From Mytilus trossulus (lineage: Eukaryota): a stretch of DNA of 64,000 nt. Shown in pieces: positions 34,101 through 59,340 of this stretch. The translations under genes and the position numbers were made by a program. How positions within the stretch are numbered: the stretch's first letter is position 1; each line of letters begins with the position of its first letter. A model generated the notes under the pieces. That model did no database searches, was not told where the DNA came from, and saw only the letters and a list, made by a program, of their open reading frames with translations. The stretch spans positions 4,464,001 to 4,528,000 of the forward strand of contig NC_086376.1 of assembly GCF_036588685.1 (NCBI RefSeq), in the 5' to 3' direction.

Positions 34101-35349
34101 TAATAGTGTTCTTTTGAATGTCCTTGTAAATCATTTATCTTTCCTATTAGGTCTATTTTTTAATAATATCTTTTTGACGTAACTCGTTATTTTTGTACTT
34201 TTTTTCTCATTTTTTCTTATGTGCGTTGCCTATATATGCCATCTTGTTTTGCTTTGTTGACGTATCTGTTTATTTTTATAGTGGTTAACATTTTAATACA
34301 GTGTGACTGCTGTACTCCTTTCTTTCAGAAGTTTACCTATTTTTTTATTCACACATTGTCGTCAATAAAATGCAACAGTGAGAGGTTTATATGGCTATAA
34401 CACCAGATTAAATCCACCATTTTTTTTATTACGAAAATCGAATGAACTTTTTGACACAATTCAGTTCTAAGTGCCTTCGAATTCTATTTTTATAAGGTAC
34501 ACGTATCCAGGTATCACGATTGAAAGACCATGCACATATTTTGTGCTGATTAGCTTACAGACTGACAAAGACGTTTTAACTTTTCATATTTCTCTGTCCT
34601 AAATGGTCTTGTATTTATTACTACTGCAGTCCCGTAATGTAATGCTGTCATTTTATTGTTATATTTTACATTGTGACAAAATTGTCATGTACCAAGTCAT
34701 GAAAATGGCAGTTGTTGTCTTATAGTTCGTTTCTGAGTGTGTTGCATTGTCGTTTTGGATTTTGTTGCACCTCAGTGTTCTATTGTTTCGTTGTTTCCCT
34801 CTTATAGTTGATGTGTTTACCTCAGATTTAGCTTGTAACCCGGATTTGTTTTCTCTCAATCGATCTATGACTTTCGAACAGCGGTAAACTACTGTTGCCT
34901 TTTTTTTCATATACTTAACCTACTAAACCAACCAAACCCAAACATCGGTATACACATTGGGTATTGTTATACGATTTTGGTATGACTGAACGGAAAAAAG
35001 ACAATCTGAGAAAAGCAATATACATTGTCCAATGCATTTTTCTTAATTATATATAGAAAAATGTGGTGTGAGTGCCAATGAGACAACTATCCATCCAAAT
35101 AACATTTTATAAAAGCAAACCATTATAGGTCAATTTACGGCCGTCAACAAGGATACTTGGCTCACACCTAACAAAAATCTATAAAGGGCCCCAAAATTAC
35201 TATTGTAAACCCATTCATACGGAAAAACCAACGGCTTAATCTATATAAAAACGAGGAACACGTATAAATTACATAAACAAACGACAACTTCTGTACATCA
35301 GATTCCTGACTTAGGACAGGTGCAAAACTTATTGATATTGAAAATATTG

Positions 35350-36200
35350 ACGTTCCCTTGTCACCATCCTACGGTGTTTATATATCTCAACTTGTACGAT
35401 TCGCTCGTGTATGTAACAATGTTTTATATTTTAACGAGAGAAATTTATGTATTACTGAAAAATTATTACATCAGGGTTTTCGATATCACAAACTAGTCAA
35501 AACATTTACTAAATTTTATCATCGGTATAAAGACATCATTCGTAAATATAGCTCAACATGCAGACTTCTTATTCGTTCAGGTATTTCACATCCAATTTTT
35601 TATGGAAATACTCTTTATAAAGCACAAAGGTGTCAGTATTCACCTCAGAAACTTACAAAACCTTTGAATAGACTTATTAAGAAGGGATATAATTACGATA
35701 CTGTTGTCAAGTCATTAAAGATTGCATATTTTGGCGTTAATAGTGAGTCACTGATAAGGTTTTGCGTCGGAACTAAAAAACAGTTGTTGGCATGACACGG
35801 GTTATGTTCTTCTCATATATGTTATGATGGTATGATACTAAACCCCTAACGGGAAGAATTGTGCCGGATGTACATATGATGAAATCATAATCTTTCAGTC
35901 AGTTTAACTGAAGTCTGGAGCTGGCATGTCAGTTAACTGCTAGTAGTCTGTTGTTATTTATGTATTATTGTCATTTTGTTTATTTTCTTTGGTTACATCT
36001 TCTGACATCAGACTCGGACTTCTCTTGAACTGAATTTAAATGTGCGTATGGTTATGCGTTTACTTTTCTACATTGGTTAGAGGTATAGGGCGAGGGTTGA
36101 GATCTCACAAACATGTTTAACCCCGCCGCATTTTTGCGCCTGTCCCAAGTCAGGAGCCTCTGGCCTTTGTTAGTCTTGTATTATTTTAATTCTAGTTTCT
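35350..36200 (+). mobile_element. Penelope-like retrotransposon 3' fragment (RT thumb/C-terminus plus 3' UTR)
   Basis: DVPLSPSYGVYISQLVRFARVCNN...KLLHQGFRYHKLVKTFTKFYHRY; a second copy of this family lies at about 47055-47880. Confidence 0.85.
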
Positions 36201-39881: not shown

Positions 39882-42391
39882 ATGAATACTTTTATAACCG
39901 TTCTCCTAGTGTCCGTTGCCTTTGCAAATGCTGTACCTAGATATGGCGGCGGTAAAGGAGGTTAGTTGTTATTATTTACAAAATATGATTTTTGCTCTAT
40001 TTCTCAAAACAAAGGACCAACTTTTATATCTTTATGAAAATACTTTAGTATTGCAATTGTTTCGCTTGGATTTAGTTCTATACAAATCGGTATAAACGAA
40101 TGCGGATTTTATTTTGGGATAAGATTGCATGAAAGTGAAACATAAGTCTCTGATATAACGTCAAAATACCGATTTTTTCTTATAAAGTGAGAAATAATTT
40201 TATCATCTTGTCTGTAAAAAATAATCACAAAAAGGATAATCAAAGAAATATGGCACAGATTCGAATTACAATATCGATATAAAAAGAAAGTTAGAAAGAA
40301 AGTTTATAGAAAAATGACTGTAAATTATCTAGAAAAATGTGTTTTTCTATCATTTAATATCGTTGTATAATTATTTCAGTAGGTGGATCAATCAGTGGAT
40401 CAATTGATGGATCTATTGGCGGAAATGTTGGAGGTGGCTTCGGAAGTGGACTTTCTAGTTCTCTCAGTGGTGCTCTTAGCGGAAACTTGGGTGGTGGCAT
40501 TGGAAGCGGAATTGGCGGCGTAGGTGTATCTAACTCTCTCAATGCTGCTCTTAGTGGAAATTTGGGAGGTAGTCTAGGAGGTGGATTCGGCGGAAGTGGA
40601 CTATCTAGTTCACTCAACGCTGCTTTAAGTGGAAACTTGGCCGGAGGCATTGGAGGTGGTCTTGGAGGTAGTGGAATTTCTAATTCTCTTGCTGGTGCTC
40701 TAAGCGGTAATTTGGGAGGTAGTCTAGGAGGTGGCCTCGGTGGTAGTGGACTATCTAGTTCTCTCAATGCTGCTTTAAGCGGAAATTTGGGAGGAAGTCT
40801 CGGAAGCGGCATTGGAGGCAGTGGCATTTCAGGTTCTCTGGCTGGTGCTCTAAGCGGAAATTTGGGAGGTGGAATTAGTGGTGTTGGTGCCGGCAGATCT
40901 ATCTCCATCAGCATTAGTGCATACCTTAGATTGATTTCCCACATCTCTGCTCTTCAACAAACCATCTCTGCCAATACCTTAGCAGCAAGTTTGAGCGGTG
41001 GAATCAGTGGTGGAATCGGCGGAGGAATTGGTGGTGGAGTAGGAGGTGGATTCACTGGTGGTGCTGGATCTAACTTTGCTGGACAATTTGACGGTGGATT
41101 TGCTGGTTCTGTTGGCAGATCTGGATTCGGAACTGGAGTAGGAAGCAGCGGATTTGCCGGACAATTCGGAAGTGGATTTAGTGCACAAAGTGGAAATATC
41201 GGAGGTATTGGAGGAGCCGGTGGTTTGAGTGGAGGACTTTCCGGAGGATTAAGTGGTGGAATTTCTGGTGGACTAGGAGGTGGTATTGGAAGTGGTGCTG
41301 GAGGAATCAGCAGTGCAAGCCTTCAAGGTCAGTATTCTATGTAAAAAAGTTAAACAAATTTAAACAGGAATCCTTAAATTTTAAATTTTGCGATACTTAA
41401 TATGTATAACGGAACGATATTAGTAGGGATATATAAAAAAACATTTTATTAAGTGATGTAAATAGCATTAATCATTGAATCAATATCGACTTAAGATCGA
41501 GTACGATTTTCCTTGTTCTTTTTCCCCCGTTTTACGGGGATGGGGGTTGGGGTGCAGTTCAAACATGAGATTGCCTTGAATCGAACGCCATCGGTACTTT
41601 TATGTAGACGAACGTTAACACTGGCGTAACTAATTATGAACCTGGAATATGTAATCAATGATCTGCTGATTGCCACAGTTGTCCCATTGAGTAAAATTAC
41701 GCGTTGTTGTGATTCTATTATCCTTTTTAACTTCATCTATAATCTTTATGTCGTTTTCAGCTGCTCTTCAAGGAAGTGTAAGCAGTGGATTCGGAGGCAG
41801 ATCTGCTGGAAAAGGTAAGCCTTCAAAAAAGTCTGAAATATAACAAGATATAAGGATTTTTAAAAGTTTTTATCAGACATAGTAACATGCACAGTGTACT
41901 CGATAGTAAGGGCCAATTTACTATTATCGATTTTGTAGTCATTAAGAAAAACACGAAAGATGATAAAACCTACAATTCAAATATTAAACGGTCTTTGTTA
42001 TTTTCTCTTTAACTTTTAACTTTTTAAGAAATTTTACATATTTTCGAAGATAATGGAATGTTGTGAAATGTTGAATCAATAAACAATGGACCTGAAGACA
42101 CCTCTTCAAACAAGTTTACATAGTGCTTTGCATATGATTGTTTTGACCTTCACATATAAAAACAACCAACATAAGAAATATATAATTATTTGAAATGACA
42201 CACATAGGAGAAATACCAGAATAATAAGTAAACGTATAATTTGAAAATAAACTTTCAGGGATCAAAAAGTGATAAGTAAAGTTTTATTAAGTGTAATCTA
42301 TGTTTATTTTTGATAAAAGTGTATGCAAAATTTATGTATTTTTCAATTAGACATACTAATATATATCATTTATCTTGTAGGAGCATACTAA
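39882..42391 (+). CDS. Secreted Gly/Ser-rich structural protein, paralog C (363 aa); coding exons 39882-39960, 40380-41327, 41761-41814, 42381-42391
   Basis: Signal peptide MNTFITVLLVSVAFANA then VPRYGGGKG; about six 25-aa GGSGLSSSLNAALSGNLGGSLGGGL repeats; ISISISAYLRLISHISALQQTI motif; ends RSAGKGAY*; phase-1 introns; AATAAA at 42475. Confidence 0.9.
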
Positions 42392-44949
42392 ATAACATAT
42401 GCATATTTATTTGACGCCTGAAGTCGATGAACGAACAACTCCATTTCTCTTTTGTTGTATATACTTGGTATTAGAATAAACATTGTCATCAGAATCAATT
42501 TTTTTTGGTTGTTTGTTTTCCCCCTTAATACAGTAATAACAAAATACAAACCACGTCAATAACCAGCCACAATCACTTTTAATGTAAATATAACAGAATT
42601 TGATGAGACTGTCATTAAAGTGACAGGGTTAGCGCTATAGAACCAGGTTTAATCCACCATTTTCTACTTTTAAAATGCCTGTACCAAGTCAGGAATATGA
42701 CAGTTCTTGTTCATTTGTTTTTGATGCGTTTTGTTATTTGATTTTGCCATGTGACTATGGACTTTCCGAATTGATTTTCCTCTAAGTTCAGTTTTTGTGT
42801 GATTTTACTTTTTAGTCCATGTTGTTAGAGTTTCTTTGATTTTCAAAAATGATGTTTGATGAACTTTTTGTTTTTTTTCATACTTCAATTAACTGTGAAG
42901 AAATATACTCTCAATAACGAAGAGAAGATTACAATACTACCAAGGAAAAGAAGATTGAAAAACAATGAGTCTTTCAGTTTATTATGATAAGTGGCGTAAC
43001 AAATCGTTATGATCCAAAATCAGTGATCACTTTTGATTAAGACATTTTAAGTTCTGAATAAAACATTGCACTTGTGTACATATAATATACCGTATATGTT
43101 GACGTTTCCTCGTACATTTTGACAAACTCTCACGATTCAACCGGATTTGTAAAAATTGGAACGAAAGAGACAAAGCACCCAAAACTATCAAGATTTTTTC
43201 CGAGCACAAAAACCGTACAGACTTGTTATTGATAACTGTTTTTTCCTCTGACCCAAGCTCTTTACAAAGTTGCAGTCTGATGTCTGATCGAAATCTAATG
43301 TTTTACATTTCCAAACTTATTCGGTTCTAAATAGCTTGTACCAAGTTTTCTGACTTTGTATAACGTCACCAGTGTCTGATTACTAAGTTTGCTATTTTAT
43401 ATATTTTTTGTTATTCATCATGGATTGACAGGCATTTACATATATTTACTAGAGTGGCACTTTATAAAACAAGCGAGATAAATAAGCATAGTCAAGCAAA
43501 TGAAAGAAAAAAAGAAAATATGGTTTTTATAAAACGATACAATATATAGGTAAATATATATATGGACGAAGTAAACCATTTTCATTAAATAATATAGTTA
43601 ATAATTGTAATTACATTCCGTGCACATTTATACATTACAATTCACTATTGAATTTATTAATAACTAATCCCAGGAGTTCCAGTAAATGTTATTATCTTTT
43701 GCACTCATGTTTATCTATCTCTGATATAGTTTATAACATCTATACGATAGTTTTCCTGTTGCATCGTGAATCTGTAGATGAAATGTATTGCTAGTAAAAT
43801 GACTTTATATTTTTTCAAATTTAATTTATAGTTATCATAAAAACCAAACATGTCTATATTTACAATTAGTGGTATTTCAATATGTATTGCTTAAAAAATC
43901 TAAGCATTTAGATGGTGTCAGATGTCTGCTACAATATGTCAGACCCACAATGAATGTTCTATGTTTTCTGGTTTTTCCTTGCAAAATGTATATAAATTGC
44001 ACTGTACACGGTTTATTTTTAAAAGTAAAGTATAAGTACCTACAATACGATGAATAATTCGGTATTGAAACTATCAGAGCTGGGTATTTTTGAAAATTTA
44101 TATCACAATTATGTATTTTTTCAAATCTCCTCATATTTGATTAAATATACTCTCCCATTTCGCTCAGCTGCAATCACAACTGGTATCGTTCCTCGGTTTA
44201 AAGTATTATACATATCTTTTGAACCAATGTTTGACTTGAAATGTTTTTTAAATATTCATAGGTAGCAAAGCGTGTTGTTTTTTCCCTTTCAGCGTTGATT
44301 CCTATAGATTGTAATCATTCTTTAATGTTATTTTAATCCCATAAAATTGTAAAAGTGTGTGTTTAAAAGTATATAACCGTTTAAAATTTTGAAAAAACAA
44401 TACATTTTCTTGCTCATCTAGGCGGTCATTCACAGGCCATAACCCATTTTAGTGCCCATGTTCTATAATAAACACAGACAATATCAATTTTAATGTTCCC
44501 ATTATTCTATATAAATGAATATATGACTTCCACAAAATTGAAAGGACATTTCGCAGTCTTGACATATTTTTCAAGTCACAAAAGACTTCTTTGCAAAAAA
44601 CGTTATCTTATTTTTCAGTTGTTCCAAAATCAGTCAAATCTGTTATTGTTTTTATGTGTAGCAGTAAATCATTTAATCACTTTGAATTTGAATAAAATAA
44701 TCTTCTAACCCAAGTCAAGTTAAGCCCGTGTATAAAATGTCTCAAACGAATCATTTTGAAGCCATTGTTATTGAATCTTATGCAATTTGATTGGATTAAG
44801 TTGTTATTCGCTTATACATTTATGCTTTTCATACATGACTATTGTTTAAATCAGAACGTGCATGAACGTGTAAAATAACTTAAATGACATTAAAACTGGA
44901 CACTGAACGGGTCAATATTTTTTTATCAATAAAAGTAAAGGTACGAAAG

Positions 44950-46845
44950 GTATCACAATTGATACATTATTCACGTGCTTGTTCACACTATACGGACTTC
45001 ATATACAGGAGTGTGCTCCTTACGCAGAAACTGCTCCAACAAAGTTATGAGGAGGACAGATTAAAATTGACACTCCGTAAATTTTATGGACACCATCACG
45101 AATTGGTGGATCCATATGATGTCTCTTTAACCAAACTAGCTAAGGACATTTTTACCACATGGTAGATTGTGGTTTGTCATTATGTCGTCTAATCTTTTTA
45201 TTACCAAACGTGACTTATTCCCGATTGTGACTGTTTTGCTGAATGTGAATTCGCATTACTATAAGACGTGTTTCTGTACTTGTTTATCCCAAATTCATAT
45301 ATTTAGTTTACATGTTTAATGTTATATTTGTAATTCTCATCGGATTTTGTCAAATGTGTTGACGTCTTTTTATTATATTTAGGTGTTGCGGATAGAAAAA
45401 TTAATCACCGCCTTTATTAATTATATTAAATTTTGAACAATTATTTACGTTTGAAGGTGGATTCATAACAAACTGGACATATATATATATTACAGTTAAT
45501 TGCTATTAATAAGTATTGCAATATGCATTTTGTTTAAATGAATTATCAGTATTTAGTTCTAATATAATCTTAAATCAATCCTAATTCTATCTCACTTTGA
45601 TAGTTTTTCATATGTGACGTCATGCTGTTTCTAAATTTCATAAATTCCAATGTGGCATAACGTTTGTGCCGTTTCGCCATCGTATGTGACGTCACATTTT
45701 TTTAATTACGTTGACGCCTGAACTGATTCGGATGTGTCTATTCTGTGTTAAACTTTAATAGCATTATGTATTCGGGTTCAGTTTTCTGTAATTAGTTACT
45801 ACTTCAGTTTCATTATGTAATCTCTTTCATATTCATTTGTTAAAATTTACTGTTTGCAATAGCATGAATTGTTCTATATAATAAGGATGTTCTTATCCCG
45901 GGCATAAAAACAATGCCGTATTTGGCAAAACCTTTTCAACTTTAGATCTTCAGTGCTGTACAACTTTGTACCTTTTTCACTTTCGATCTTTTATATCTTG
46001 GCGTTATGTATTCGGGTTTAGTTTTCTGTAATTAGTTAATACGTCAGTTTCTTAATGTTAACTCTTTCATATACATTTGATAAAATTTACTGTTTGCAAT
46101 AGCATGAATTGTTCTATATAATAAGAATGTTCTTATCCCGGGCATAAAAACAATGCCGTATTTGGCAAAACCTTTTCAACTTTTGATCTTCAGTGCTGTA
46201 CAACTTTGTACTTTTTTCACTTTCGATCTTTTATATCTGGGCGTCACTGTTGATTTTTGTGTGGACAAGGCGCGTTTTTGGCGTATTGAATTTTAAACCT
46301 GATGCTTTTTGTTATCTATTAATCATGTTTTTCTTTGTCTAATATGTTCTCCTATTTATTTGTATTGTAGTCCTGTAATATTATGTTGTCATCTCAATGT
46401 TATATTTAACTTTGCCATTAAAGTGCGAGGTTTGGCATGCCACAAAACCAGGTTCAACCCACCACTTGTATTCCCCTTTAAAAGTGTCCTGTACCAAGTC
46501 AGGAAGATGGCCATTGTTATATTATTGTTCGTTTATGTGTGTGTTGCATGTTAACGTTTAGTCGTTTGTGTTTTCTCTTATTTTTGAGATATTGAGATAA
46601 GACGTGGCACGGTACTTGTCTATCCCAAATTCATGTATTTGGTTTTTATGTGATATTTGTTATTCTCGTGGTGTTTTGTCTGATGCTTGGTCCGTTTCTG
46701 TGTGTGTTACGTTTCGGTGTTATGTCGTTGTTCTCCTCTTATATTTAATGCGTTTCCCTCGGTTTTAATTTGTTACCCCGATTTAGTTTTTTGTCCATGG
46801 ATTTATGAGTTTTGAACAGCGGTATACTACTGTTGCCTTTATTTA
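44950..46845 (+). mobile_element. Penelope-like element 3' fragment with long 3' non-coding region (includes a 240-bp tandem duplication and a decayed hammerhead-like motif)
   Basis: SQLIHYSRACSHYTDF...KLLQQSYEEDRLKLTLRKFYGHHHELVDPY; direct repeat 45764-46003 / 46004-46243; gcgtcactgttga...ggacaaggcgcg..tggcgt at about 46240-46285. Confidence 0.7.
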
Positions 46846-47054: not shown

Positions 47055-47880
47055 GTCTCACAAACTAGTCAACACATTTACTCAATTTTATCATCGGTAT
47101 AAGGACTTCATTCGTAAATATAGCTCCACATGCAGACTTCTTATACGTTTAGGTATTTCACATCCAATATTTTATGGAAATATTCTTTATGAAGCACAAA
47201 AATTTTAGTATTCACATCAGAAGATAACAAAACCTTTAAATAGACTTCTTAAGTAGGGATATAGTTACGATATTAATGATTATCGGTCATTAACGATTGC
47301 ATATTTTGGCGTTTATATTGTTTTATTTATAGGGTCTTTACATCGGAACTAAACACATTTATTTAAAAACCAGTTGTTGGCATGACACGGGTTATGTTCT
47401 TCTCATATATGGTTTGATAGTATGATACTCAACCCCTCACGGGGAGTATTATGCCTGATATTCATATGATGAAGACATATTTTTAAATTAGTTTAATCGA
47501 ATTCTGGAGCTGTCATATCAGTTAACTGCTAGAAGTCTGATGTTATTAATATATTATTGTTATTTTGTTTATTTTCATTGGTTACACATTCTGACATCAG
47601 ACTCGGACTTCTCTTGAACCGAATTTTCATGTGCGTATTGTTATGCGTTTACCTTTCTGCATTGGCTAGATGTATAGGGGAGGGTTGAGATCTCATAAAC
47701 ATGTTTAACCCCGCCTGTCCCAAGTCAGGAGCCTCTGGCCTTTGTTAGTCTTGTATCATTTTAACTTTTAGTTTCTTGTGTACACTTTGGAGTTAAGTAT
47801 GGCGTTCACTATCACTGAACTAGTATATATTTGTTAAGGGGCCAGCCGAAGGACGCCTCCGGGTGCGATAATTTCTCGCT
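47055..47880 (+). mobile_element. Second copy of the PLE family seen at 35350-36200
   Basis: cacaaactagtcaacacatttact...aattttatcatcggtataag...catgacacgggttatgttc...ccaagtcaggagcctctggcc is colinear with 35487-36200. Confidence 0.85.
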
Positions 47881-47899
47881 ATTTATTTTCAAAAATTCA

Positions 47900-50510
47900 A
47901 CATGAAAATCTCCGATAGATGATTTCTCATGGTCCTAAGTTTAGAGAACCCCAATACATCAATTGGAACCATAACTTCAAAATAATTATGGATTTCATTG
48001 AGGACTACGCCAGGGCATGGGCTAAGCGAGAAGAAGTTGAACTGGACACTTTGTCAGAATGGGTTAAAACAATCAGGTCTCTGATAAAACATCGAATTCA
48101 CAAGTTGAAAAACTGTGTGAACGATCGACCAAAGTCCGTTTTCAGAGACAAAGAGGCCATGAAATGTCTATCAAATCTTCATGATAAGTATGTTGTTGTT
48201 CCTGCGGACAAAGCTTCAAATAATATTGTCTTTGTATGTAAATCGTATTACTACGAATGTTTTTTAAAAGAATTGGGTATAAAGGAGCACTCAGGTAATC
48301 CCACATACAAAGACATATCATTTGACAAGGATGAGATTTTGGCAAATCATAAGTCCTTCATGGCTTCAATAAACATTACATTGAACACCAAATCAGAGGA
48401 CTTACCTTGTTTGTATTGGATACCAAAGCTTCATAAAATTCCGTACAAACAACGGTATATTGCTTGCTCATCTTCATGTTCCACTAAAGAATTGCCGATT
48501 AGATTGACTAAAATTCTGTTCGCAGTGAAAGAGGGTCTTCAGAAATACTGTGAAACTGTTTACTCGCGTAGTGGTATAAACCATATGTGGATTCTTAAAA
48601 ATTCTAAAGAACTTCTAGACATGTTTAAATCTCTTTCTTTTTCTGAAATTAGTTCCATCAAAACTTTAGATTTTCCAACCCTGTATACCACCACTCCCCA
48701 TGTGAAATTGAACAATTGCCTAAAAGAAATAATCCACAATGCCTTTCAACCTAAAGATGGTAGCATACGCTATAAATTTATTACTTTAGAATTTCATAAG
48801 GCATATTTCGTTAATAATGACAAACAAAAAGGTAAAATATACTACACAGAAGAACAAGTGATCAGTATGCTGGAGTGTCTCATCGACAACATATTTGTTG
48901 AGTTTGGGAACAAACTGTGCGCCTCTTCTTGCCGACCTCTTCTTATTTTCATATGAATCGGAGTTCCTCCAGACACTTGTCAAAAACAAGAGGATCAAAG
49001 AAGCCAGATTATTTAATTTCACTTTCAGATATATTGATGATGTTCTTTCCATAAACAATCCGAACTTTTCTGATTGGGTTCCATTAATATTTCTCACAGA
49101 ACTACTGATTAAAGAAACAACAGACACGGCTTCCTCCGCCCCATTTTTAGACTTATATCTCGAATTTGACTTACACAGTCATCTCAGTACCAGAATTTAT
49201 GACAAACGAGACGATTTTAATTTTAAAATTATAAATTTCCCCCACCTTAGTAGCAATATACCAACTTCACTTGCATATGGGATATATATATTTCCCAACT
49301 TATTCGATATTCAAGAGCTTGCAGCTCCTACTTAGACTTTGTAAAACGTCATCAGTGCCTGAGTAGAAAGTTGATGAACCAGGGGTATGTCAAAGAACGT
49401 CTTGTCCTTTTCCTAAAATCGGAAGGTACCAAGACCTTATTAATCAATATTCCATATCAACTTCTCAAATAATACACGATGGTCTTGATGTATAAATTCT
49501 GCGTACTGATGTTGTATATCATCTTAACAACGTTTTGTTGTTCTTTCGTTTGTCTTTGTTCTATTATTAATATTACTTTTACTGTTGAATGGTTTTATGT
49601 GATATCCGTTTGACGTGGCTCGGTACTTATACATCTCGTCAACGTGTTTGTATTGGCTTTCATTTTTTAGTGGTTTGTTTTGTATATGCTACTTTTTGTA
49701 TTTCTTTTGTTCTTATAACGTGACTCTGTACTTTAAAAGATCCCGTCAGTATGATATTGTTCTATTATATGTCATGGTATATTTCTATTATGAAGTACTA
49801 TATACGTTGAACCACAAACGTCAAAAGCATTCAATCGCGTAGTGGAATCAACTGTTTTTGGATTCTTATAAATTCTACATATAACTTTTGGACTAGTTTA
49901 AATCTCGGTCTATTTCTGAAATTTATTCTTACATACTTTTGATTTTTTAACCTTGAATATTGCCTATGTAAGTTTTAAAATTGATTGTATGCACATTGAA
50001 CATTTATATGACGTATAAAAATTTCTGACGTCAGACACTCAAATCAATCAATGTATTCGTAGATAGTAGATGTGTTTGTGTTCTGTTAAATTGTTCCTTT
50101 TAAAATTGTTATACGATGATGACTGATGTACCCATATTTATACTATTTTATTAATTGTGTCTGTTTAATTAACGCATCAATGTAAATATAACGGAATTTG
50201 ATGAGACTGTCATTAAAGTAAGAGGGTTAGCGCTTTGAATCAGGTTTAATACACCATTTTCTACATTTGAAAATGCCGGTACCAAGTCAGGAATATGACA
50301 GTTTTTGTCCATTCGTTTTTGATGCGTTTTGTCAGTTGATTTTTCCATGTGATTATGGACTTTCCGAATTGATTTTCCTCTAAGTTCAGTATTTTTGTGC
50401 TTTTACATTTTTCTACATGGAAGACCTGTTGGTAACCTCCTGCTGTTGTTTTTTCTATGGTTGGGTTGTTGTCTCTTTGACACATTTCCCATTTCCATTT
50501 TCATTTTTAT
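47900..50510 (+). mobile_element. Penelope-like retrotransposon, 5'-truncated reverse-transcriptase pseudogene plus 3' region
   Basis: Motifs GPKFREP, VVPADKASNN, YWIPKLHK, MWILKNS, TLDFPTLYT, GTNCAPLLADLFL, FRYIDDVLSINN, YDKRDDFNF, SNIP..AYGIY. Frameshifting deletion at about 48907 removes the QxxGxPM part of RT motif B; further frameshifts near 49290. No endonuclease is visible after the RT. Confidence 0.9.
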
Positions 50511-51457: not shown

Positions 51458-54400
51458 ATGAATACTTTTATTACCTTAGTCCTTGTGTCCGTTTCCTTTG
51501 CAAATGCTGTACCCAGATATGGCGGCGGTAAAGGAGGTTAGTTTTTTAAATTTACATAATATGATTTTTGCTCTATTTTACCAAACTAAGGAAAAATTCG
51601 AAAAGTTTGAATATTTTTTTAAGTGTTTTGGTGATCTATAATTAATTCCTGAAAAAGTTCTTTAAAAAAATAAAAATATCGATTTGTGATGATCTGATTT
51701 CATATTCAATTACTTGATTAAGTTTTACGACGAATTTAACATGACTTAGATTAATGATTGATTATGGTTTGATGAACGTTCAAGGGCTTATATATCGTTC
51801 AAATACAGTGCAGTAACATGAATTAAATACAGGAATTGATAAATTATAAAAATTTAGCCAACCTGGTCTTTAACCTTACAACTGGATAATTATGGATTCC
51901 CCATTTGGTTGTAGCAGGGAATCCATAACATGTTAAGAGCGTTGAACTCTTCACGACTAAAAGCACGTTCGAATCATAATGCTTTAAAAGGTGCCGTTTT
52001 CAAATTTGTACGGTTTCAAATACTCTTGTTAGAACTTTCAAAAATAGTCTACCCCCAAATGTCAGAATAAAAATATTCTCTTTTTTTAATATCTTTATGT
52101 AAATACTTCGGTATGGCAATTGCTTTGCTGGGATTTAGTTCTATACAAATCTGTTAAAACCAATGCGGATTTTATTTTTGGATAAGTTTGTACGACAGTG
52201 GAACGTAAGTCATTGATATTACGTATAAATATCGATCTTTCTAATGAAGTGAGAAATAGTTTTAGATTATAATAATCATCACAAAAAGAATAATTATAGA
52301 AATATGGCACCAATTTTATTTCCAAAATCGATAACATAAGACAGTTTAAAAAAAAGAAATTTTATAGAAAAATGATTGAAATTAACTAGAAAAGAAAAAA
52401 ATTCAAAACAACAAAATGTGTTTTTCTATCATTTAATACCGTTGTATAAATTATTTCAGTAGGTGGATCAATCAGTGGATCAATTGATGGATCTATTGGC
52501 GGAAATGTTGGAAGTGGCTTCGGAAGTGGACTTTCTAGTTCTCTCAGTGGTGCTCTAAGCGGAAACTTGGGTGGTGGCATTGGAAGCGGAATTGGCGGCG
52601 TAGGTGTATCTAACTCTCTCAACGCTGCTCTTAATGGAAATTTGGGAGGTAGTCTAGGAGGTGGATTCGGCGGAAGTGGACTATCCAGTTCACTCAACGC
52701 TGCTTTAAGTGGAAACTTGGCCGGAGGCATCGGAGGTGGTCTTGGCGGTAATGGAATATCCAATACTCTTGCTGGTGCTCTAAGTGGAAATTTGGGAGGT
52801 AGTCTAGGAGGTGGTCTCGGCGGTAGTGGACTATCTAGTTCTCTCAACGCTGCTTTAAGCGGAAATTTGGGAGGAAGTCTAGGAAGCGGTATTAGCAGCA
52901 GTGGCATTTCAGGTTCTCTGGCTGGTGCTCTAAGCGGAAATTTGGGAGGTGGAATTAGTGGTGTTGGTGCCGGCAGATCTATCTCCATCAGCATTAGTGC
53001 ATACCTTAGATTGATTTCCTACATCTCTGCTCTTCAACAAACCATCTCTGCCAATACCTTAGCAGCAAGTTTGAGCGGTGGAATCAGTGGTGGAATCAGT
53101 GGAGGAATCGGTGGTGGAGTAGGAGGTGGATTCATTGGTGGTGCTGGATCTAACTTTGCTGGACAATTTGACGGTGGATTGGCTGGTTCTGTTGGCAGAT
53201 CTGGGTTCGGAACTGGAGTAGGAAGCAGCGGATTTTCTGGACAATTCGGAAGTAGATTCAGTGCACAAAGTGGAATCGGAGGTATTGGAGGAGCCAGTGG
53301 TTTGAGTGGAGGACTTTCCGGAGGATTAAGTGGTGGCATTTCTGGTGGACTAGGAGGTGGTATTGGAGGTGGTGCAGGAGGAATCAGCAGTGCTAGCCTT
53401 CAAGGTCAGTATTCTTCTATGTAAAAAAGTTATACCAATTGAAACAGGAATTCTAAAATATGAAATTTTGCGATACTTTATATGTATGAAGAAACGGAAT
53501 ATGAAATGGACATCTGTTAGTGACTGCTCCAGTAGTACATGTATATATAATCCTGTTAATGACACATTTCAAACTTATGATGAAATATTAGCATAATAAA
53601 CAGCCTGATATATTAGAATAGATAGAAACAAAACACTTAATTAAGTGTTGTAAATAACATTATTTATTTAATAAATACCGACTTAAGATCGATAACGATT
53701 TCCCTCGTTCTTATTTTTTCCCGTTTTTTTACAGGGATGGGGTTTGGGTGCAGTTCAACCATTTGATTGCCTTGAATCGGATGCCATCGATTAATCTTAT
53801 TCAGACGCGCGTCAGCACTGGCGTAACTAATTATGAATCTGGAATGTGCAACCAATGATTCGCTGTATGGTACAGTTTTTCAATTGAGTAAATTACGCGT
53901 TGTTGTGTTTCTATTATTCTTTTTAACTTCATCTATTATCTTATGTCGTTTTCAGCTGCTCTTCAAGGAAGTGTAAGCAGTGGATTCGGAGGCAGATCTG
54001 TTGGAAAAGGTAAGTTTTAAAAAAGTTTTAGATATAACAAGATATATAGATATAAAGATTTAAGATTTAATCAGACATAGAACAAGGACAGTGTTCTCGA
54101 TAGTTCGGGTCAATTTACCTAATATTTTTTAAAAGAAAAACACGAAAGTTATTAATAATCATTGGCAATATTATATCTTATTATTTATAATATGCTCAAA
54201 AAGAAAAAGTGATCAATTACAGTGCACATTAATTTAAATTGATCTCGCCATTTCGGGGTCAAACTCTATTCGAAGATAATGAAATCTTATGAAATGTTGA
54301 TATTAAAAAAAATAATTTAACAGACATCTCTTCAGTTTTATATCAATCTGAACAAAGAAGTTTACATAGTGCTTTGCATATTATTGTATTAACATTCACA

Positions 54401-55238: not shown

Positions 55239-56015
55239 GAATCTAAGACTACTTTTTAATTTCATACTACCAATAACTGTGGAGAAATATACTCTAATGC
55301 TTTACATTTTCAAACTTATTCGGTTTTCAATAGCATGTAGAAACCAGTCGCCCCAAAAAATTTCCCAGCAATAAAGCGTGTTTGGTCAGAATAATTACAT
55401 GTGATTACTTCCTGCTTCTGAACGACTGATATTTGCCCTATTTTATTGACACGAAGACAAAATATCTATGTTTATCCAAAACACCTTGAACAATTCTGCT
55501 GTGAAGCAATCTGACCACGGACTATTATTATTTTTCATCCTTTTCAAAGCTTGTGATATTTCAGTAAAGGTAATATTACCTTCTAGTGAATCCTTTTTAT
55601 TATCTTTTAATTTAGGTGTTAGAAATGGTATTTTCCCTTAAACATTGACTTCTTTTATACACTCTAGTTTTCTGTAAAATTTCTCAAAAAATCAATTTTG
55701 TTTGGTTCAAGATTTCTTTAAAAGTTTTATTTACAACATATTGGGTTAAAAGATTTATATATATATATATGACATGCACACGTATAAAAATTGCGGTTTT
55801 TATCCAACGCAGTCATAGGTTTGAACGTAGTTTTCAATTTAGACTCGTTTATATTTTTTGTTTAGGCATGTATCATATTTTCCCTCCGGTTTATATGATC
55901 CGTTCATCCTATATATTGACTCTTAAAATTCAAGAGTTAATCTAAAAATGAGGGTACTTTCTCTAAAAATGAGGGTGCTTTTTATATGGCCTTCCAAATA
56001 CCGTTTCGATCCCTA

Positions 56016-56059
56016 ACATCACTGAAGAGACATTTATTGTCGAAATCCGGATATGGTGT
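56016..56059 (+). ncRNA. Type I hammerhead ribozyme (copy 1)
   Basis: Stem I ACAUCA/UGGUGU; core CUGAAGA; stem II GACA-UUUAU-UGUC; GAAA; palindromic stem III AUCCGGAU; cleavage triplet AUA (cut after 56053). Confidence 0.85.
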
Positions 56060-56581
56060 ACTAAAGAAACATTGACACCGAATGTTTGTGGCACAACATC
56101 CTGTCCACAAGTTAACAATTTTTTTTTTCTGTGACGTATTAAATTTATAATAAGATCCATTTTGTTACAACCTGTGATCAATTTTATTTGGCAATCGCCA
56201 ATGGCAATCAGCAGGGTTAAAGAACATCAGTTGTTCGACCTGTTAGTCAAATGCGTTTTGTTTAAATATACTTTTTCACTCTTTTGGAAAATGTTGTTTG
56301 TGCTGTTTTTAGACCCTTCTACAACGAAATTTGTTTGACATGCACACGTATAAAAATTGCGGTTTTTATCCAACGCAGTCATAGGTTTGAACGTAGTTTT
56401 CAATTTAGACTCGTTTATATTTTTTGTTTGGGCATGTATCATATTTTCCCTCCGGTTTATATGATCCGTTCATCCTATATATTGACTCTTAAAATTCAAG
56501 AGTTAATCTAAAAATGAGGGTACTTTCTCTAAAAATGAGGGTGCTTTTTATATGGCCTTCCAAATACCGTTTCGATCCCTA

Positions 56582-56625
56582 ACATCACTGAAGAGACATT
56601 TATTGTCGAAATCCGGATATGGTGT
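56582..56625 (+). ncRNA. Type I hammerhead ribozyme (copy 2)
   Basis: Identical to copy 1; predicted cut after 56619. Confidence 0.85.
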
Positions 56626-57147
56626 ACTAAAGAAATATTGACACCGAATGTTTGTGGCACAACATCCTGTCCACAAGTTAACAATTTTTTTTTTCTGTGA
56701 CGTATTAAATTTATAATAAGATCCATTTTGTTACAACCTGTGATCAATTTTATTTGGCAATCGCCAATGGCAGTCAGCAGGGTTAAAGAACATCAGTTGT
56801 TCGACCTGTTAGTCAAATGCGTTTTGTTTAAATATACTTTTTCACTCTTTTGGAAAATGTTGTTTGTGCTGTTTTTAGACCCTTCTACAACGAAATTTGT
56901 TTGACATGCACACGTATAAAAATTGCGGTTTTTATCCAACGCAGTCATAGGTTTGAACGTAGTTTTCAATTTAGACTCGTTTATATTTTTTGTTTGGGCA
57001 TGTATCATATTTTCCCTCCGGTTTATATGATCCGTTCATCCTATATATTGACTCTTAAAATTCAAGAGTTAATCTAAAAATGAGGGTACTTTCTCTAAAA
57101 ATGAGGGTGCTTTTTATATGGCCTTCCAAATACCGTTTCGATCCCTA

Positions 57148-57191
57148 ACATCACTGAAGAGACATTTATTGTCGAAATCCGGATATGGTGT
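57148..57191 (+). ncRNA. Type I hammerhead ribozyme (copy 3)
   Basis: Identical to copy 1; predicted cut after 57185. Confidence 0.85.
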
Positions 57192-57569
57192 ACTAAAGAA
57201 ATATTGACACCGAATGTTTGTGGCACAACATCCTGTCCACAAGTTAACAATTTTTTTTTCTTTCTGTGACGTATTAAATTTATAATAAGATCCATTTTGT
57301 TACAACCTGTGATCAATTTTATTTGGCAATCGCCAATGGCAATCAGCAGGGTTAAAGAACATCAGTTGTTCGACCTGTTAGTCAAATGCGTTTTGTTTTA
57401 ATATACTTTTTCACTCTTTTGGAAAATGTTGTTTGTGCTGTTTTTAGACCCTTCTACAACGAAATTTGTTTGACATGCACACGTATAAAAATTGCGGTTT
57501 TTATCCAACTCAGTCATAGGTTTGAACGTAGTTTTCAATTTAGACTCGTTTATATATAACTATATATAT

Positions 57570-57792
57570 ACAACTCGTCTAAACATCAACCCAACAATGT
57601 TAGATCTGTAAATTTACTTTCGCAAATTTTTGGTTCTTCCCTCGCCGGGATTCGAACCCATGCTACTGTGATATCGTGACACCAAATCGCCTGCACTGCA
57701 GCCGTCCCGCTAGACCACACGACCACCTGGGCTCTCAAAAAAAGAGCTTTCGGTGGGCATATGTTACCTTTCCACGTCAGTTAAAATCTAGT
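57570..57792 (-). mobile_element. tRNA-derived SINE inserted in (TA)n
   Basis: Minus strand shows A-box-like TGGTCGTGTGG and B-box GGTTCGAATCC, followed by a tRNA-unrelated tail ending in (TA)n; truncated relative at 16935-17030. Confidence 0.75.
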
Positions 57793-57807
57793 TATATATA
57801 TATATAT

Positions 57808-58037
57808 ATAGTATCTTGTGGGAACGACATAACAATCTTGTTGGAACAACATAACATCTTGAGGGAACGAGATAGTATTTTGAGGGAACGACATAGTATC
57901 TTGTGGGGACGACATAGTATCTTGAGGGAACGAGATAACTATCTTGTGGGAACGACATATCATCTTGAGGGAACGACATAGTATCTTGAGGGAGCAACAT
58001 ATTTTTGTTTCTTTCATGGCCGCATTCTGCCACCGTA
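57808..58037. repeat. 21-22-bp minisatellite (about 9 copies), probably one arm of a foldback MITE
   Basis: atagtatcttg(a/t)gggaacga(c/g) repeated; terminates in ...ccaccgta, similar to the ...ttccgta end of the 10257-11274 element. Confidence 0.8.
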
Positions 58038-59039
58038 CAATGCAATACTGAAGCAAATATTCTCTCGATACAAAACACATTTCTGCTTAACTGACACCCA
58101 TTACATTGTCAATTACTTTCTTTTTCTCACAAAATTAGTACTTTCTATCTTTACACATGTTATGACTTTTAGACTTTTATTAAACCAGACACAATGTTCT
58201 TTTAAAGAATTCAGTCCTTCAAATATTTCTTGTAACAAAATAACATGATCTCCTCTGTGTATTACGAAAAACAAATCAACATTGTCATAAAACGTCACAA
58301 AACTTAATTCAATAATGTTTATAAGAAAATACATTACTAGTCAGCACATGGCGATTGTTTTGTTTGAACTATCTTTTGTGTGTGCTAATTAGACTGTTCG
58401 AATGGTATTCATAATACTTTTTTGTGCCAGTTCGTCTTTAAATTGCACACGGTATTCTGCTTTCCATTTCTTTTCCTCGCCGCATTTTGTAAGTCAGGAG
58501 CTTATAATGAAGTGGTTGTTTTTCTTGCTGTGTATTTTTATTATTGTTTTAAACATCAGGCCATGAGGTTCTCTTTTGAATTGTTTTTACATTTTAAATT
58601 TCTATGCCTTTTATAGCTTACTGTGTGGTTTATGTTTTTCTCATTGTTGAGGGCCGTACGGTGACCTATAATTAGCGATATAACTTTTATGTCATTTGTT
58701 CTCTGTTTGAGATTTGTCTCAATCATACCATATCTTTTTTTTTACTATTTAAAGAAATTCCTATGCCTCGTTTGCCGAGTGATCATAAAGAGTTTATTTG
58801 CATGCAGTAATCACTATATCATGTCAACATTGAGGTTGTGAAATAAACCCAGCTCGTTTTTATAAGGGTGTTCGACTACGATCCTTAATTTCTAGGATTG
58901 CCATTGTCAGTATTCTCCTGTTCCCACGAAGGTCAATGTCCTATTCTAAATCTTGAACGATCCTTAAAAAGTTTATTTAGATTTCTTTTATAAAAAAGTA
59001 CATTTTTTGCCATATTTCGATTTCAGACTTATTAGATAT

Positions 59040-59340
59040 CGAACTATTGGACGTCGGACTATTTGGGTGTCGGATTAATGGCGTATCGGACTACTTGGGT
59101 GTCGGACCAATAGAGTGTCGGAATAATGGGGTGTCAGAATATATAGCTATATAGGCTGCCCTATATATAATGGTTTACTTTTACAAACTGTGACTTGGAT
59201 GAGAAAGTTGAGAAAATCAGCGGACAAAAAGCTAAATTATTGGACGAAAAACAAAACGGACAAAAAACAAAAGTGTCGAAAAAAATTATAGACAAAAAGC
59301 AAAACTCGAAAAGCAAAAGTGTCTGACAAAAAGCACCGTA
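59040..59340. repeat. Degenerate short sub-repeat arrays (gtcggactatt/ggtgtcgga; ggacaaaaagc)
   Basis: About 18-bp units at 59040-59140 and about 17-20-bp units at 59220-59335; likely MITE arms. Confidence 0.55.

What the first reader, a model, noticed from the sequence alone, without database searches (positions are those of the whole stretch)
55771..57555. 566-bp tandem array with an intact hammerhead ribozyme in every unit: a retrozyme-like circular-RNA generator
Seen: three near-identical 566-bp units plus an about 85-bp terminal redundancy, inserted in a (TA)n tract, with no credible ORF. Each unit has a complete type I hammerhead: ACAUCA-CUGAAGA-GACA(UUUAU)UGUC-GAAA-UCCGGAU-A-cut-UGGUGU. 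Established: tandem type I hammerheads define non-LTR retrozymes and PLE pseudo-LTRs in metazoans, whose self-cleaved monomers circularise and are re-integrated as multimers by Penelope-like RTs. Inference: transcription would release two exact 566-nt monomers (56054-56619 and 56620-57185). The non-integer copy number fits rolling-circle reverse transcription of a circRNA, and the high unit identity suggests a recent, active family. The unit is longer than the few-hundred-nt retrozymes I recall, so it may be an undescribed family. PLE RT remnants in this window indicate a possible mobilising partner.
Basis: partly seen in the sequence, partly recalled or inferred. Interest (0 to 1): 0.9.

Follow-up and report, generated by a model that had tools for sequence, protein, structure and literature searches.

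The report
Hammerhead-ribozyme tandem retroelement in (TA)n
This is one real copy of an abundant non-coding mobile element of a mussel-like genome, made of 566-base tandem units that each carry a self-cleaving hammerhead ribozyme motif; the kind is already known (animal "retrozymes" tied to Penelope-like elements), but this family has a fixed internal 3' end that hints at how such elements are copied.

Summary
Window 55771-57555 is a 3.16-unit head-to-tail array (period 566, 99-100% identity) lying between (TA)n tracts. It has no ORF over 75 aa. Each unit carries a well-formed type I hammerhead (cuts after 56053, 56619 and 57185).

The array is not a local oddity. The genome (1.3 Gb) holds at least 3,592 intact copies of this hammerhead and 1,485 identical 3' junctions to (TA)n.

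In 15 of the 16 arrays I could read, the 3' end sits at unit position 366-367 (...TTTAGACTCGT[T/A]TATAT), and the 5' ends differ among arrays. Two arrays show target-site duplications. This is the signature of target-primed reverse transcription with 5' truncation, as in Penelope-like elements (PLEs).

The start point lies 367 nt inside the ribozyme-defined monomer, so the template must be a circle or a multimer.

Helix III is a palindrome, kept through a compensatory change in one subfamily. It is predicted to pair between neighbouring ribozymes as a double hammerhead.

Rfam does not recognise the motif.

Verdict: a new member, a separate family, of a known kind (non-LTR retrozyme / PLE-dependent non-autonomous element). 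The unit length lies within the published range. First-stage notes of this scan record other hammerhead/PLE elements elsewhere in this genome.

The parts
55771..57555 (+). Whole insertion: 3.16 tandem units of 566 bp (unit positions 284-566, two full units, then 1-367)
55756..55770 (.). (TA)7 tract at the 5' junction (target microsatellite)
55771..56053 (+). 5'-truncated first unit (unit positions 284-566); it carries the first hammerhead
56016..56059 (+). Hammerhead 1: helix I ACAUCA/UGGUGU, CUGAAGA, helix II GACA-UUUAU-UGUC, GAAA, helix III UCCGGA, cut after A56053
56054..56619 (+). Full monomer 1 as delimited by ribozyme cut sites (566 nt, GC 33.9%)
56582..56625 (+). Hammerhead 2, cut after 56619
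56620..57185 (+). Full monomer 2 (566 nt; 2 mismatches to monomer 1)
57148..57191 (+). Hammerhead 3, cut after 57185
57186..57555 (+). Terminal partial unit (unit positions 1-367, 3-base insertion in a T run), ending at the 3' terminus used by nearly all copies of the family
57539..57555 (+). 3'-terminal box TTTAGAC-TCGT-TTATAT. The AGAC lies in the 3' strand of a predicted 11-bp hairpin that ends 3 nt before the terminus
57556..57570 (.). TA-rich tract at the 3' junction, shared with the neighbouring SINE-like element
57571..57792 (-). About 222-bp SINE-like repeat (tRNA-like A and B boxes by eye only), flanked by (TA)n on both sides, tail-to-tail with the array. Its 3' end is ...GTTTAGACGAGTTG(TA)n
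   Evidence: ARAGORN and Rfam do not call a tRNA
47853..49492 (+). 5'-truncated, frameshifted Naiad-type Penelope-like element (aa about 498-1055 of intact 1,025-1,056-aa genomic copies, 82-93% identity): a member of a candidate mobilising family, not physically linked to the array

Best explanation
The array is one insertion of a young, abundant, non-coding, non-autonomous retroelement: a non-LTR retrozyme in the sense of de la Pena, that is a Penelope-like-element-dependent parasite.

Shown:
- Each 566-nt unit carries a canonical-size type I hammerhead (helix I 6 bp, helix II 4 bp) with a weak, palindromic helix III.
- The family has thousands of copies on all chromosomes.
- In 15 of the 16 arrays read, the copy ends at the same unit position (366-367) against a (TA)n tract. 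The exact junction occurs 1,485 times in the genome. The arrays start at differing unit positions.

Inferred mechanism:
1. An array is transcribed, probably by pol II, because the + strand has T runs of 5-10 that would stop pol III.
2. Two neighbouring ribozymes pair through AUCCGGAU to form a double hammerhead and cut after AUA, releasing 566-nt monomers that a host ligase can circularise.
3. A (TA)n-specific PLE endonuclease/reverse transcriptase nicks a (TA)n tract. Intact Naiad and Neptune-like copies are present in this genome.
4. cDNA synthesis is primed on the RNA at ...UUUAGACUCGUUUAUAU (unit position 367), and the enzyme copies through the 566|1 junction one to many times.
5. Synthesis stops at a variable point, giving n.x tandem units.

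Because the start point is internal to the ribozyme-delimited monomer, the template must be circular or an uncut multimer.
For: Family and dispersal:
- At least 202 unit matches on many contigs.
- Three length subfamilies of 566, about 574 and about 553 bp.
- 3,592 intact hammerhead motifs.
- 1,485 exact 3' junctions, against 0 for the reversed-pattern control.

Retroposition signature:
- In 16 arrays read end to end, the 3' end is at unit position 366-367 in 15.
- The 5' ends lie at 1, 140, 186, 227, 237, 283, 363 (in two arrays), 452, 458, 478, 485, 496, 504, 511 and 543.
- Target-site duplications are visible where the target is not pure (TA)n (L010 AATGAA.., L014 ATAAGCAATATATA).
- L014 has a second, inverted array.

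PLE-like traits from the literature: partial tandems, 5' truncation, inverted copies and (TA)n bias in Naiads (PMC8557442).

Partner candidates in the genome:
- Many open 1,056-aa Naiads.
- A 911-aa element with a C-terminal GIY-YIG domain, whose own insertion is 1.04 tandem units ending TATAGACTTTTATAT(TA)12.

Ribozyme:
- All core positions are present.
- The descriptor hits only the three array positions in the window and none in 200 simulated sequences.
- The subfamilies differ at four hammerhead positions, all permissive: loop 2, H17 A to C, and UCCGGA to UCUAGA, which keeps the palindrome.
- Non-palindromic helix III variants are about 2 of the first 100 listed.
- The double hammerhead scores -24.7 kcal/mol against -2.1 for the monomeric hammerhead fold.
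- The unconstrained MFE of 56005-56640 pairs the two AUCCGGAU segments 566 nt apart and forms both helices II and one helix I in trans.

Template:
- Only 4 of about 1,485 insertions begin at the ribozyme cut site, which is no more than chance. cDNAs therefore rarely run off a cleaved 5' end.
- Units within an array differ by 0.24% on average (median 0), against 0.79% between arrays.

General features: GC 33.9% and no ORF over 75 aa, as described for animal retrozymes (PMC7229834).
Against:
- Rfam's hammerhead models do not reach threshold.
- The family is young, so the near-invariance of the ribozyme mostly reflects recency. The covariation rests on one compensatory pair at a CpG, counted over copies and not over events.
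- The + strand monomer is only mildly more structured than shuffles (z = -1.8), unlike the 'highly self-paired' circles described for known retrozymes.
- No PLE read here shares more than a roughly 12-15-nt terminal box with the unit, so the partner is unproven.
- Long arrays could also have grown by unequal crossing-over after insertion.
- Some arrays hold heterogeneous units, which a single circle does not predict.
Confidence: 0.8

Rival explanations
1. Same non-autonomous PLE-type retroelement, but no circular RNA is involved. Linear read-through transcripts of existing arrays are the templates, the reverse transcriptase starts internally at any ...TTTAGACTCGTTTATAT site, and the hammerhead is inactive, weakly active or serves another role (for example trimming upstream read-through RNA).
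For: - An internal start site works equally well on an uncut multimer.
- 5' ends at the cut site are not enriched, which is also what an inactive ribozyme would give.
- Some arrays contain units that differ by 1-2.5% or by a 21-bp indel (array 2), as if copied from a heterogeneous multimer.
- PLE-type hammerheads showed low activity in vitro (PMC4209133).
- Naiads spread well without hammerheads (PMC8557442).
Against: - The ribozyme core is intact in 3,592 copies, and between-subfamily changes fall only at permissive or compensated positions.
- Many arrays have zero substitutions between their units, as expected from repeated copying of one small template.
- Related Mytilus retrozymes are proven abundant circles (PMC7229834).
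Confidence: 0.15
2. A satellite-like tandem repeat carried by a DNA transposon (Helitron/Helentron or a MITE-like element), as described for dispersed short arrays in oysters. The hammerhead would be incidental.
For: Bivalve genomes are rich in short dispersed arrays carried by Helentrons (PMC7492417, listed). Insertion next to TA is also a Helitron habit.
Against: - There are no non-repeat arms: the array itself abuts the (TA)n on both sides.
- Only the 3' end is fixed, whereas the 5' ends differ among arrays.
- The target-site duplications seen are 6-14 bp, whereas Helitrons make none.
- No 5'-TC...CTRR-3' termini are present.
Confidence: 0.03
3. Local tandem duplication or an assembly artefact of a single-copy sequence, with a chance hammerhead-like motif.
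For: None beyond the general risk that tandem repeats are mis-assembled. Unit lengths differ in T runs, which may be sequencing noise.
Against: - Thousands of copies lie at more than 1,400 loci, and the arrays read vary in copy number.
- The motif is absent from 200 simulated windows.
Confidence: 0.02

Closest known systems
Mytilus galloprovincialis non-LTR retrozyme (Mg353 type; Cervera & de la Pena 2020, PMC7229834)
   Same: - Short dispersed tandem arrays, low GC, no ORF, and one type I hammerhead per unit.
- It co-exists with PLEs.
- Hammerheads nearly identical to Mg353's occur in this very genome next to Naiads, so the host is a Mytilus-like mussel.
   Different: - No sequence similarity of unit or ribozyme: Mg353 has CUGAUGA and a stable helix III (ACGCGCGUC), whereas this family has CUGAAGA and the palindromic UCCGGA.
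- Unit length is 553-575 nt against 350-390 nt.
- Mg353 cleaves as a monomer and is proven to form circles; this family is predicted to need two ribozymes and is untested.
Newt satellite 2 / axolotl HHR_Amex1 retrozymes (double hammerheads)
   Same: Helix I of 6 bp, helix II of 4 bp, and a very short helix III with a palindromic loop, so that two tandem ribozymes pair to make the active form (PMC4209133, PMC7229834). The same topology is predicted here.
   Different: Different phylum and no sequence similarity. The loop 1/loop 2 tertiary contacts typical of those ribozymes were not examined here.
Penelope-like elements (Naiad and Neptune clades) and their pseudo-LTR partial tandems (Craig et al. 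2021, PMC8557442)
   Same: More-than-unit tandem insertions, a fixed 3' end with 5' truncation, adjacent inverted copies, and a strong (TA)n target bias. A 911-aa PLE of this genome shows the same n.x-unit architecture and a similar terminal box.
   Different: No ORF. No extended homology to any PLE read here. Naiads lack hammerheads, and the 911-aa element read here has no CUGANGA in its 3.3-kb unit.
Vertebrate non-LTR retrozymes derived from PLE pseudo-LTRs (Li, Clavereau & Pollet 2026 preprint, 10.64898/2026.07.22.740005)
   Same: Same concept of a non-autonomous PLE derivative. Consensus lengths of 51-972 bp include 566, and most families reach no more than 7 repeat units.
   Different: That work covers mainly vertebrates (no mollusc was sampled) and shows pLTR homology. 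Here no homology to a PLE pLTR was found, but a family-wide internal 3' terminus and (TA)n targeting were.
Schistosoma Sm-alpha (SINE-like element with a hammerhead; from my own knowledge, also cited in PMC4209133)
   Same: A short non-autonomous retroposon carrying a type I hammerhead. The review PMC7761336 regards animal retrozymes as a kind of SINE.
   Different: Sm-alpha has a tRNA-like pol III head. Here the T runs argue against pol III, and the tRNA-like SINE is a separate neighbouring element that shares only the 3' box.

Membership tests
Hammerhead ribozyme, type I | Conserved core: C3 U4 G5 A6 N7 G8 A9, G12 A13 A14, the A15.1-U16.1 pair, H17 at the cut, and the G10.1-C11.1 pair | tested here: met
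   CUGAAGA / G...C / GAAA / U-A are present in all three units. Across the genome H17 is A, C or U; the search pattern admitted only these.
Hammerhead ribozyme, type I | Three helices around the core, with helix I open (5' and 3' ends) | tested here: met
   Helix I has 6 bp (one G-U) and helix II has 4 bp plus a 5-nt loop. Helix III has only 2 bp plus CCGG as a hairpin, or 8 bp between two copies.
Hammerhead ribozyme, type I | Recognised by a curated covariance model (Rfam Hammerhead_1 and relatives) | tested here: not met
   There is no hit at gathering score or at E<=10 on 2 kb. The only hit is 12 bits to RAGATH-1-hammerhead on 86 bases. Short-helix-III metazoan variants are found in the literature by descriptor searches rather than by these models (PMC4209133).
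Hammerhead ribozyme, type I | Self-cleavage at the predicted site | not testable with these tools
   Needs in vitro transcription of 1-, 2- and 3-unit constructs.
Hammerhead ribozyme, type I | Covariation supporting the helices | tested here: inconclusive
   One compensatory pair in helix III (CCGG to CUAG) is fixed in the 553-bp subfamily, and non-palindromic intermediates are rare. Helices I and II do not vary in this young family.
Animal non-LTR retrozyme (Cervera & de la Pena 2020) | Dispersed short tandem repeats, each with a type I hammerhead | tested here: met
Animal non-LTR retrozyme (Cervera & de la Pena 2020) | No coding capacity, no LTR/PBS/PPT, and GC below 45-50% | tested here: met
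   The longest ORF is 75 aa. GC is 33.9%. The array abuts (TA)n directly.
Animal non-LTR retrozyme (Cervera & de la Pena 2020) | Monomer size of about 150-450 nt as first described | tested here: not met
   The unit is 553-575 nt. This is inside the 51-972 bp range of the 2026 preprint, so I treat size as descriptive and not as a defining feature.
Animal non-LTR retrozyme (Cervera & de la Pena 2020) | Expressed as abundant monomeric circular RNA | not testable with these tools
Animal non-LTR retrozyme (Cervera & de la Pena 2020) | Target-site duplications longer than 4 bp where visible | tested here: met
   L010 and L014 show them. Most are masked by the (TA)n target.
PLE-dependent non-autonomous element | PLE-type insertion architecture: more-than-unit tandems, fixed 3' end, 5' truncation, inverted neighbours, microsatellite target | tested here: met
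   compared with PMC8557442 and with the 911-aa PLE of this genome.
PLE-dependent non-autonomous element | Sequence homology to the pLTR or 3' end of an autonomous PLE of the same genome | tested here: inconclusive
   There is no extended similarity to the PLE loci L031-L060 and L064-L068. Only the terminal box is shared: TAGAC-N3-5-T-(TA)n.
PLE-dependent non-autonomous element | Trans-mobilisation by a PLE RT/EN | not testable with these tools
   Needs a retrotransposition assay.

The most novel reading that the evidence does not exclude
The short box TTTAGAC, lying 4-10 nt before the (TA)n junction, may be the cis signal at which a (TA)n-specific Penelope-like reverse transcriptase starts cDNA synthesis in trans.

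Observations behind this:
- The hammerhead family ends ...TTTAGACTCGT[T/A]TATAT.
- An unrelated tRNA-like SINE ends ...TTTAGACGAGTTG(TA)n.
- A 911-aa PLE ends with a related box, ...TATAGACTTTTATAT(TA)n.
- A second TTTAGAC box inside the unit is used as a rare alternative 3' end at 8 loci.

If this is right, it would be the first defined recognition element for PLE trans-mobilisation. The review PMC7761336 says animal retrozymes show no conserved motif pointing to a partner. Because the box lies 367 nt inside the ribozyme-delimited monomer, it would also be direct genomic evidence that retrozyme cDNAs are copied from circles or multimers.
Probability: 0.3. Interest if true: 0.65.

Novelty: new member of a known kind. 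Interest (0 to 1): 0.42.

Why it matters
Animal retrozymes are known to be abundant circular RNAs, but how they are copied back into DNA, and by which enzyme, is still open. The 2020 review states that their repeats show no motif pointing to a partner (PMC7761336), and the 2026 preprint calls the mechanism unresolved.

This family offers a clean natural data set on that question:
- about 1,500 insertions with one precise 3' terminus that is internal to the ribozyme-defined monomer;
- 5' ends that differ among the arrays read;
- a strict (TA)n target;
- a terminal box shared with a SINE and, in a related form, with a PLE of the same genome.

These features make the priming site, the target preference and the 'circle or multimer' template question directly testable in a species where retrozyme circles have already been shown for another family. 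As an object it is otherwise ordinary: one more hammerhead-bearing repeat in a genome full of them.

Tried and rejected
- Rfam at gathering score and at E<=10 found no hammerhead. A search of 86 bases gave only a 12-bit sub-threshold match. I relied on a descriptor with simulated controls instead.
- TRF did not report the array because its longest period is 500.
- ARAGORN and Rfam do not call the neighbouring SINE head a tRNA, so 'tRNA-like' is by eye only.
- Pfam on the eight largest window ORFs found nothing. The PLE remnants only appeared with tblastn of intact genomic PLE proteins.
- Search for the autonomous partner by homology: blastn of the unit against PLE loci L031-L060 and L064-L068 gave only true insertions of the family near three PLEs (L055, L056, L059), which look like neighbouring insertions in (TA)n, and nothing else significant.
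- Enrichment of 5' ends at the ribozyme cut site, which would point to linear cleaved templates: not seen (4 sites).
- A shared 3' hairpin between the hammerhead element and the SINE: not supported. Only the hammerhead element folds its box into a stem.
- A B-box-like GTTTCGATCCC just upstream of the ribozyme: 8 of 9 specified positions match, which I estimate has a chance of about 0.1 in a unit (my own estimate, no tool call). T runs of 5-10 argue against pol III, so I dropped it as a promoter claim.
- The bacterial promoter/terminator scan is irrelevant here and gave chance-level results.
- Helitron-borne satellite and assembly-artefact readings were rejected (see the rival explanations).
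- A first regex scan of the loci timed out and was replaced by BLAST.
Full report
**Observation**

Window 55771-57555 is a head-to-tail array with a 566-base period.
- It consists of a 5'-truncated unit (55771-56053, unit positions 284-566), two full units (56054-56619 and 56620-57185, differing at 2 positions), and a terminal partial unit (57186-57555, unit positions 1-367 plus a 3-base insertion in a T run).
- I number units from the predicted ribozyme cut.
- The array lies between (TA)7 at 55756-55769 and a TA-rich tract at 57552-57570.
- No ORF exceeds 75 aa and GC is 33.9%.
- TRF missed the array because its longest period is 500.

**The ribozyme motif**

Each unit reads ACAUCA-CUGAAGA-GACA(UUUAU)UGUC-GAAA-UCCGGA-UA|UGGUGU.
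- All invariant hammerhead core positions are present, including the G10.1-C11.1 and A15.1-U16.1 pairs and H17 = A.
- Helix I has 6 bp and helix II has 4 bp.
- A structural descriptor finds exactly these three sites in the 64-kb window on both strands, and found none in 200 Markov-simulated windows.
- Rfam does not call it at gathering score or at E<=10 on 2 kb. On 86 bases, a 12-bit match to RAGATH-1-hammerhead appears in the correct register.
- This fits the literature. Most metazoan type I hammerheads have helix I of 6 bp, helix II of 4 bp and a 1-2 bp helix III capped by a small palindromic loop. They work as dimers and were found with descriptors (PMC4209133).

Helix III is the weak point.
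- As a hairpin it is 2 bp plus CCGG, and the monomeric hammerhead fold is worth only -2.1 kcal/mol.
- Two copies form the double hammerhead at -24.7 kcal/mol, with an 8-bp AUCCGGAU duplex.
- In an unconstrained fold of 56005-56640, the two AUCCGGAU segments 566 nt apart pair with each other. Both helices II form, and one helix I forms in trans.
- This agrees with the first-stage note s1-821084.

**The family**

The assembly is 1.30 Gb in 541 contigs, with the family found on contigs C1-C14 and on smaller ones.
- Hammerheads almost identical to the published Mytilus galloprovincialis Mg353 ribozyme occur next to Naiad elements in it. The host is therefore a Mytilus-like mussel. I cannot name the species.
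- The unit has at least 202 near-identical matches on many contigs.
- It occurs in three length subfamilies of 566, about 574 and about 553 bp. These differ mainly by small duplications of 8, 21 and 28 bp.
- Exact-pattern counts give 3,592 intact hammerhead motifs.
- They give 1,485 copies of the 3' junction TTCAATTTAGACTCGTWTATATATAT, against 0 for the reversed-pattern control.

**Insertion anatomy (the main new result)**

I read 16 arrays end to end.
- The 3' end is at unit position 366-367 in 15 of them (...GACTCGT[T/A]TATAT followed by (TA)n).
- The 5' ends lie at positions 1, 140, 186, 227, 237, 283, 363 (in two arrays), 452, 458, 478, 485, 496, 504, 511 and 543.
- Unit number runs from 1.7 to 4.8 in these arrays. 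Arrays of 13 or more units exist elsewhere.
- Where the target is not pure (TA)n, target-site duplications are visible (L010, L014).
- L014 has a second array in inverted orientation.
- The 5' flank of L006 carries a short copy of the element's own 3' end.
- One search shows clusters of 3' junctions less than 100 bp apart, which means extremely truncated copies.

A fixed 3' end, variable 5' truncation, target-site duplications, more-than-unit tandems and a (TA)n target are what Craig et al. describe for Penelope-like elements (PLEs), Naiads in particular (PMC8557442). This excludes a Helitron-type carrier, which would have both ends fixed and no duplications. It also excludes a purely local duplication.

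**Consequence for the template**

cDNA synthesis starts 367 nt inside the ribozyme-delimited monomer and runs through the 566|1 junction.
- A cleaved linear monomer therefore cannot be the template. It must be a circle or an uncut multimer.
- Only 4 of about 1,485 insertions begin at the cut site with a clean (TA)n junction. That is about the uniform expectation, so cDNAs rarely run off a cleaved 5' end.
- Units within an array differ by 0.24% on average (median 0), against 0.79% between arrays. Several arrays have no substitution at all between units, though others are heterogeneous.
- These facts favour repeated copying of one small template, but they do not exclude read-through multimers or later unequal crossing-over.

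**Evidence that the ribozyme matters**

The family is young, so identity alone says little. Between subfamilies, the 44-nt ribozyme has four changes, all at permissive places:
- one in loop 2;
- H17 A to C;
- the pair UCCGGA to UCUAGA, which preserves the palindrome.

Among the first 100 genomic motifs listed, about 2 have a non-palindromic helix III. If about 9 of the 44 positions are free, four random changes would all fall there with a probability of roughly 0.002 (my own estimate). The pair is at a CpG, and the counts are of copies and not of events, so I rate this as suggestive.

**Partner**

The genome has many open PLE frames.
- Naiads of 1,025-1,056 aa have an N-terminal GIY-YIG domain (L064).
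- The L067 insertion is itself 1.04 tandem units with an inverted partial copy. It ends TATAGACTTTTATAT(TA)12, and its 3.3-kb unit contains no CUGANGA.
- No PLE read here shares extended sequence with the unit.

What is shared is a terminal box.
- The hammerhead family ends TTTAGAC-TCGT(T)-TATAT.
- The neighbouring SINE-like repeat (57571-57792, minus strand) ends TTTAGAC-GAGTTG-TATA.
- The 911-aa PLE ends TATAGAC-TTT-TATAT.
- TAGAC-N2-6-(TA)6 occurs 6,679 times against 562 for the reversed control. The listed matches are mostly these two repeat families.
- A second TTTAGAC box inside the unit (positions 253-259) serves as the 3' end at 8 loci.
- The hammerhead element lies tail-to-tail with the SINE across a short (TA)n at 205 loci, including this window. 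The two families therefore use, or create, the same tracts.
- I read the box as a candidate start signal. Its status is inference.

**Other points**

- The + strand monomer folds somewhat better than shuffles (z = -1.8). The minus strand does not (z = 0.07).
- T runs of 5-10 on the + strand argue against pol III transcription of whole units (established pol III termination rule).
Comparisons used natural copies only.

**Comparison with what is known, and novelty**

- The kind is known. Animal non-LTR retrozymes were described in PMC7229834 and PMC7761336, and were recently argued to be PLE derivatives, with consensus lengths of 51-972 bp (10.64898/2026.07.22.740005).
- The family itself differs in unit and ribozyme sequence from the published mussel retrozyme, and I found no paper describing it. 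I cannot check Repbase.
- I class it as a new member of a known kind.
- Its value lies in the family-wide internal 3' terminus, the (TA)n specificity and the shared box. These bear on the open question of how retrozymes are reverse-transcribed.

Noticed in passing
window 57571-57792 (minus strand): An approximately 222-bp SINE-like repeat flanked by (TA)n on both sides, with A-box-like TGGTCTAGCGG and B-box-like GGTTCGAATCC by eye (ARAGORN and Rfam call no tRNA). Its 3' end, GTTTAGACGAGTTG(TA)n, resembles the hammerhead element's 3' end. The two lie tail-to-tail at 205 genomic loci, and matches to the SINE's end form the largest class in the listing.
   Followed up: partly
window 47853-49492 (+); also 20369-20801 (-), 20911-21328 (+), 35349-35588 (+), 43304-43390 (+), 44950-45147 (+): Naiad-type Penelope-like element remnants (N-terminal-EN clade). 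The largest is 5'-truncated and frameshifted, 82-93% identical to intact genomic copies. The pair at about 20.4-21.3 kb is inverted.
   Followed up: partly
L067:3759-8227 (G000:C1:24864759-24869227): [quoted passage not shown] The insertion is 1.04 tandem units plus a head-to-head inverted partial copy, flanked by (TA)n. There is no CUGANGA anywhere in its 3.3-kb unit, although canonical C-terminal-EN PLEs are reported to always carry hammerheads.
   Followed up: partly
L064 (G000:C10:30943000-30952999) and many loci: Naiad elements with open 1,056-aa frames occur as tandem pairs about 4.28 kb apart at several loci, which suggests a currently or recently active family. Their 3' UTR holds approximately 270-bp internal tandem repeats.
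   Followed up: no
L046, L048, L068:3107-3452: Hammerheads almost identical to the published Mytilus galloprovincialis Mg353 retrozyme ribozyme (CUGAUGAGUCUUAUGUAGACGAAACGCGCGUC), two of them 345 nt apart, lie beside Naiad copies. This points to a Mytilus-like host and to a second, already known retrozyme family in the genome.
   Followed up: partly
loci L032, L049, L050, L055, L059, L061, L067: Another repeat family ends ...GTCACTGACTCAGACGTACT(TA)n and begins at (TA)n too. It is a further (TA)n-targeting element with an AGAC near its 3' end.
   Followed up: no
window 56001-56011 and the same place in each unit: GTTTCGATCCC just upstream of helix I matches the pol III B-box consensus GGTTCGANNCC at 8 of 9 specified positions. 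I estimate this as probably chance (about 0.1 per unit; my own estimate). T runs argue against pol III.
   Followed up: partly
window 57808-58001 and 59037-59135: A 21-bp tandem repeat (about 9 copies, 81% matches, with higher-order periods of 64, 85 and 106) right after the SINE, and a 16/32/48-bp repeat further on.
   Followed up: no
window 40354-41344 and 52386-53424: Two copies, 12 kb apart, of the same pair of overlapping ORFs (285 aa on +, 196/202 aa on -). A further 196-aa ORF lies at 3169-3759. Pfam found nothing for those tested. This is probably another repeat family.
   Followed up: no
units of arrays in L013-L030: Units of one array often have no substitutions between them but differ by 1-4 bases in length, mostly in T runs. 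This could be reverse-transcriptase slippage, replication slippage or long-read homopolymer error.
   Followed up: no
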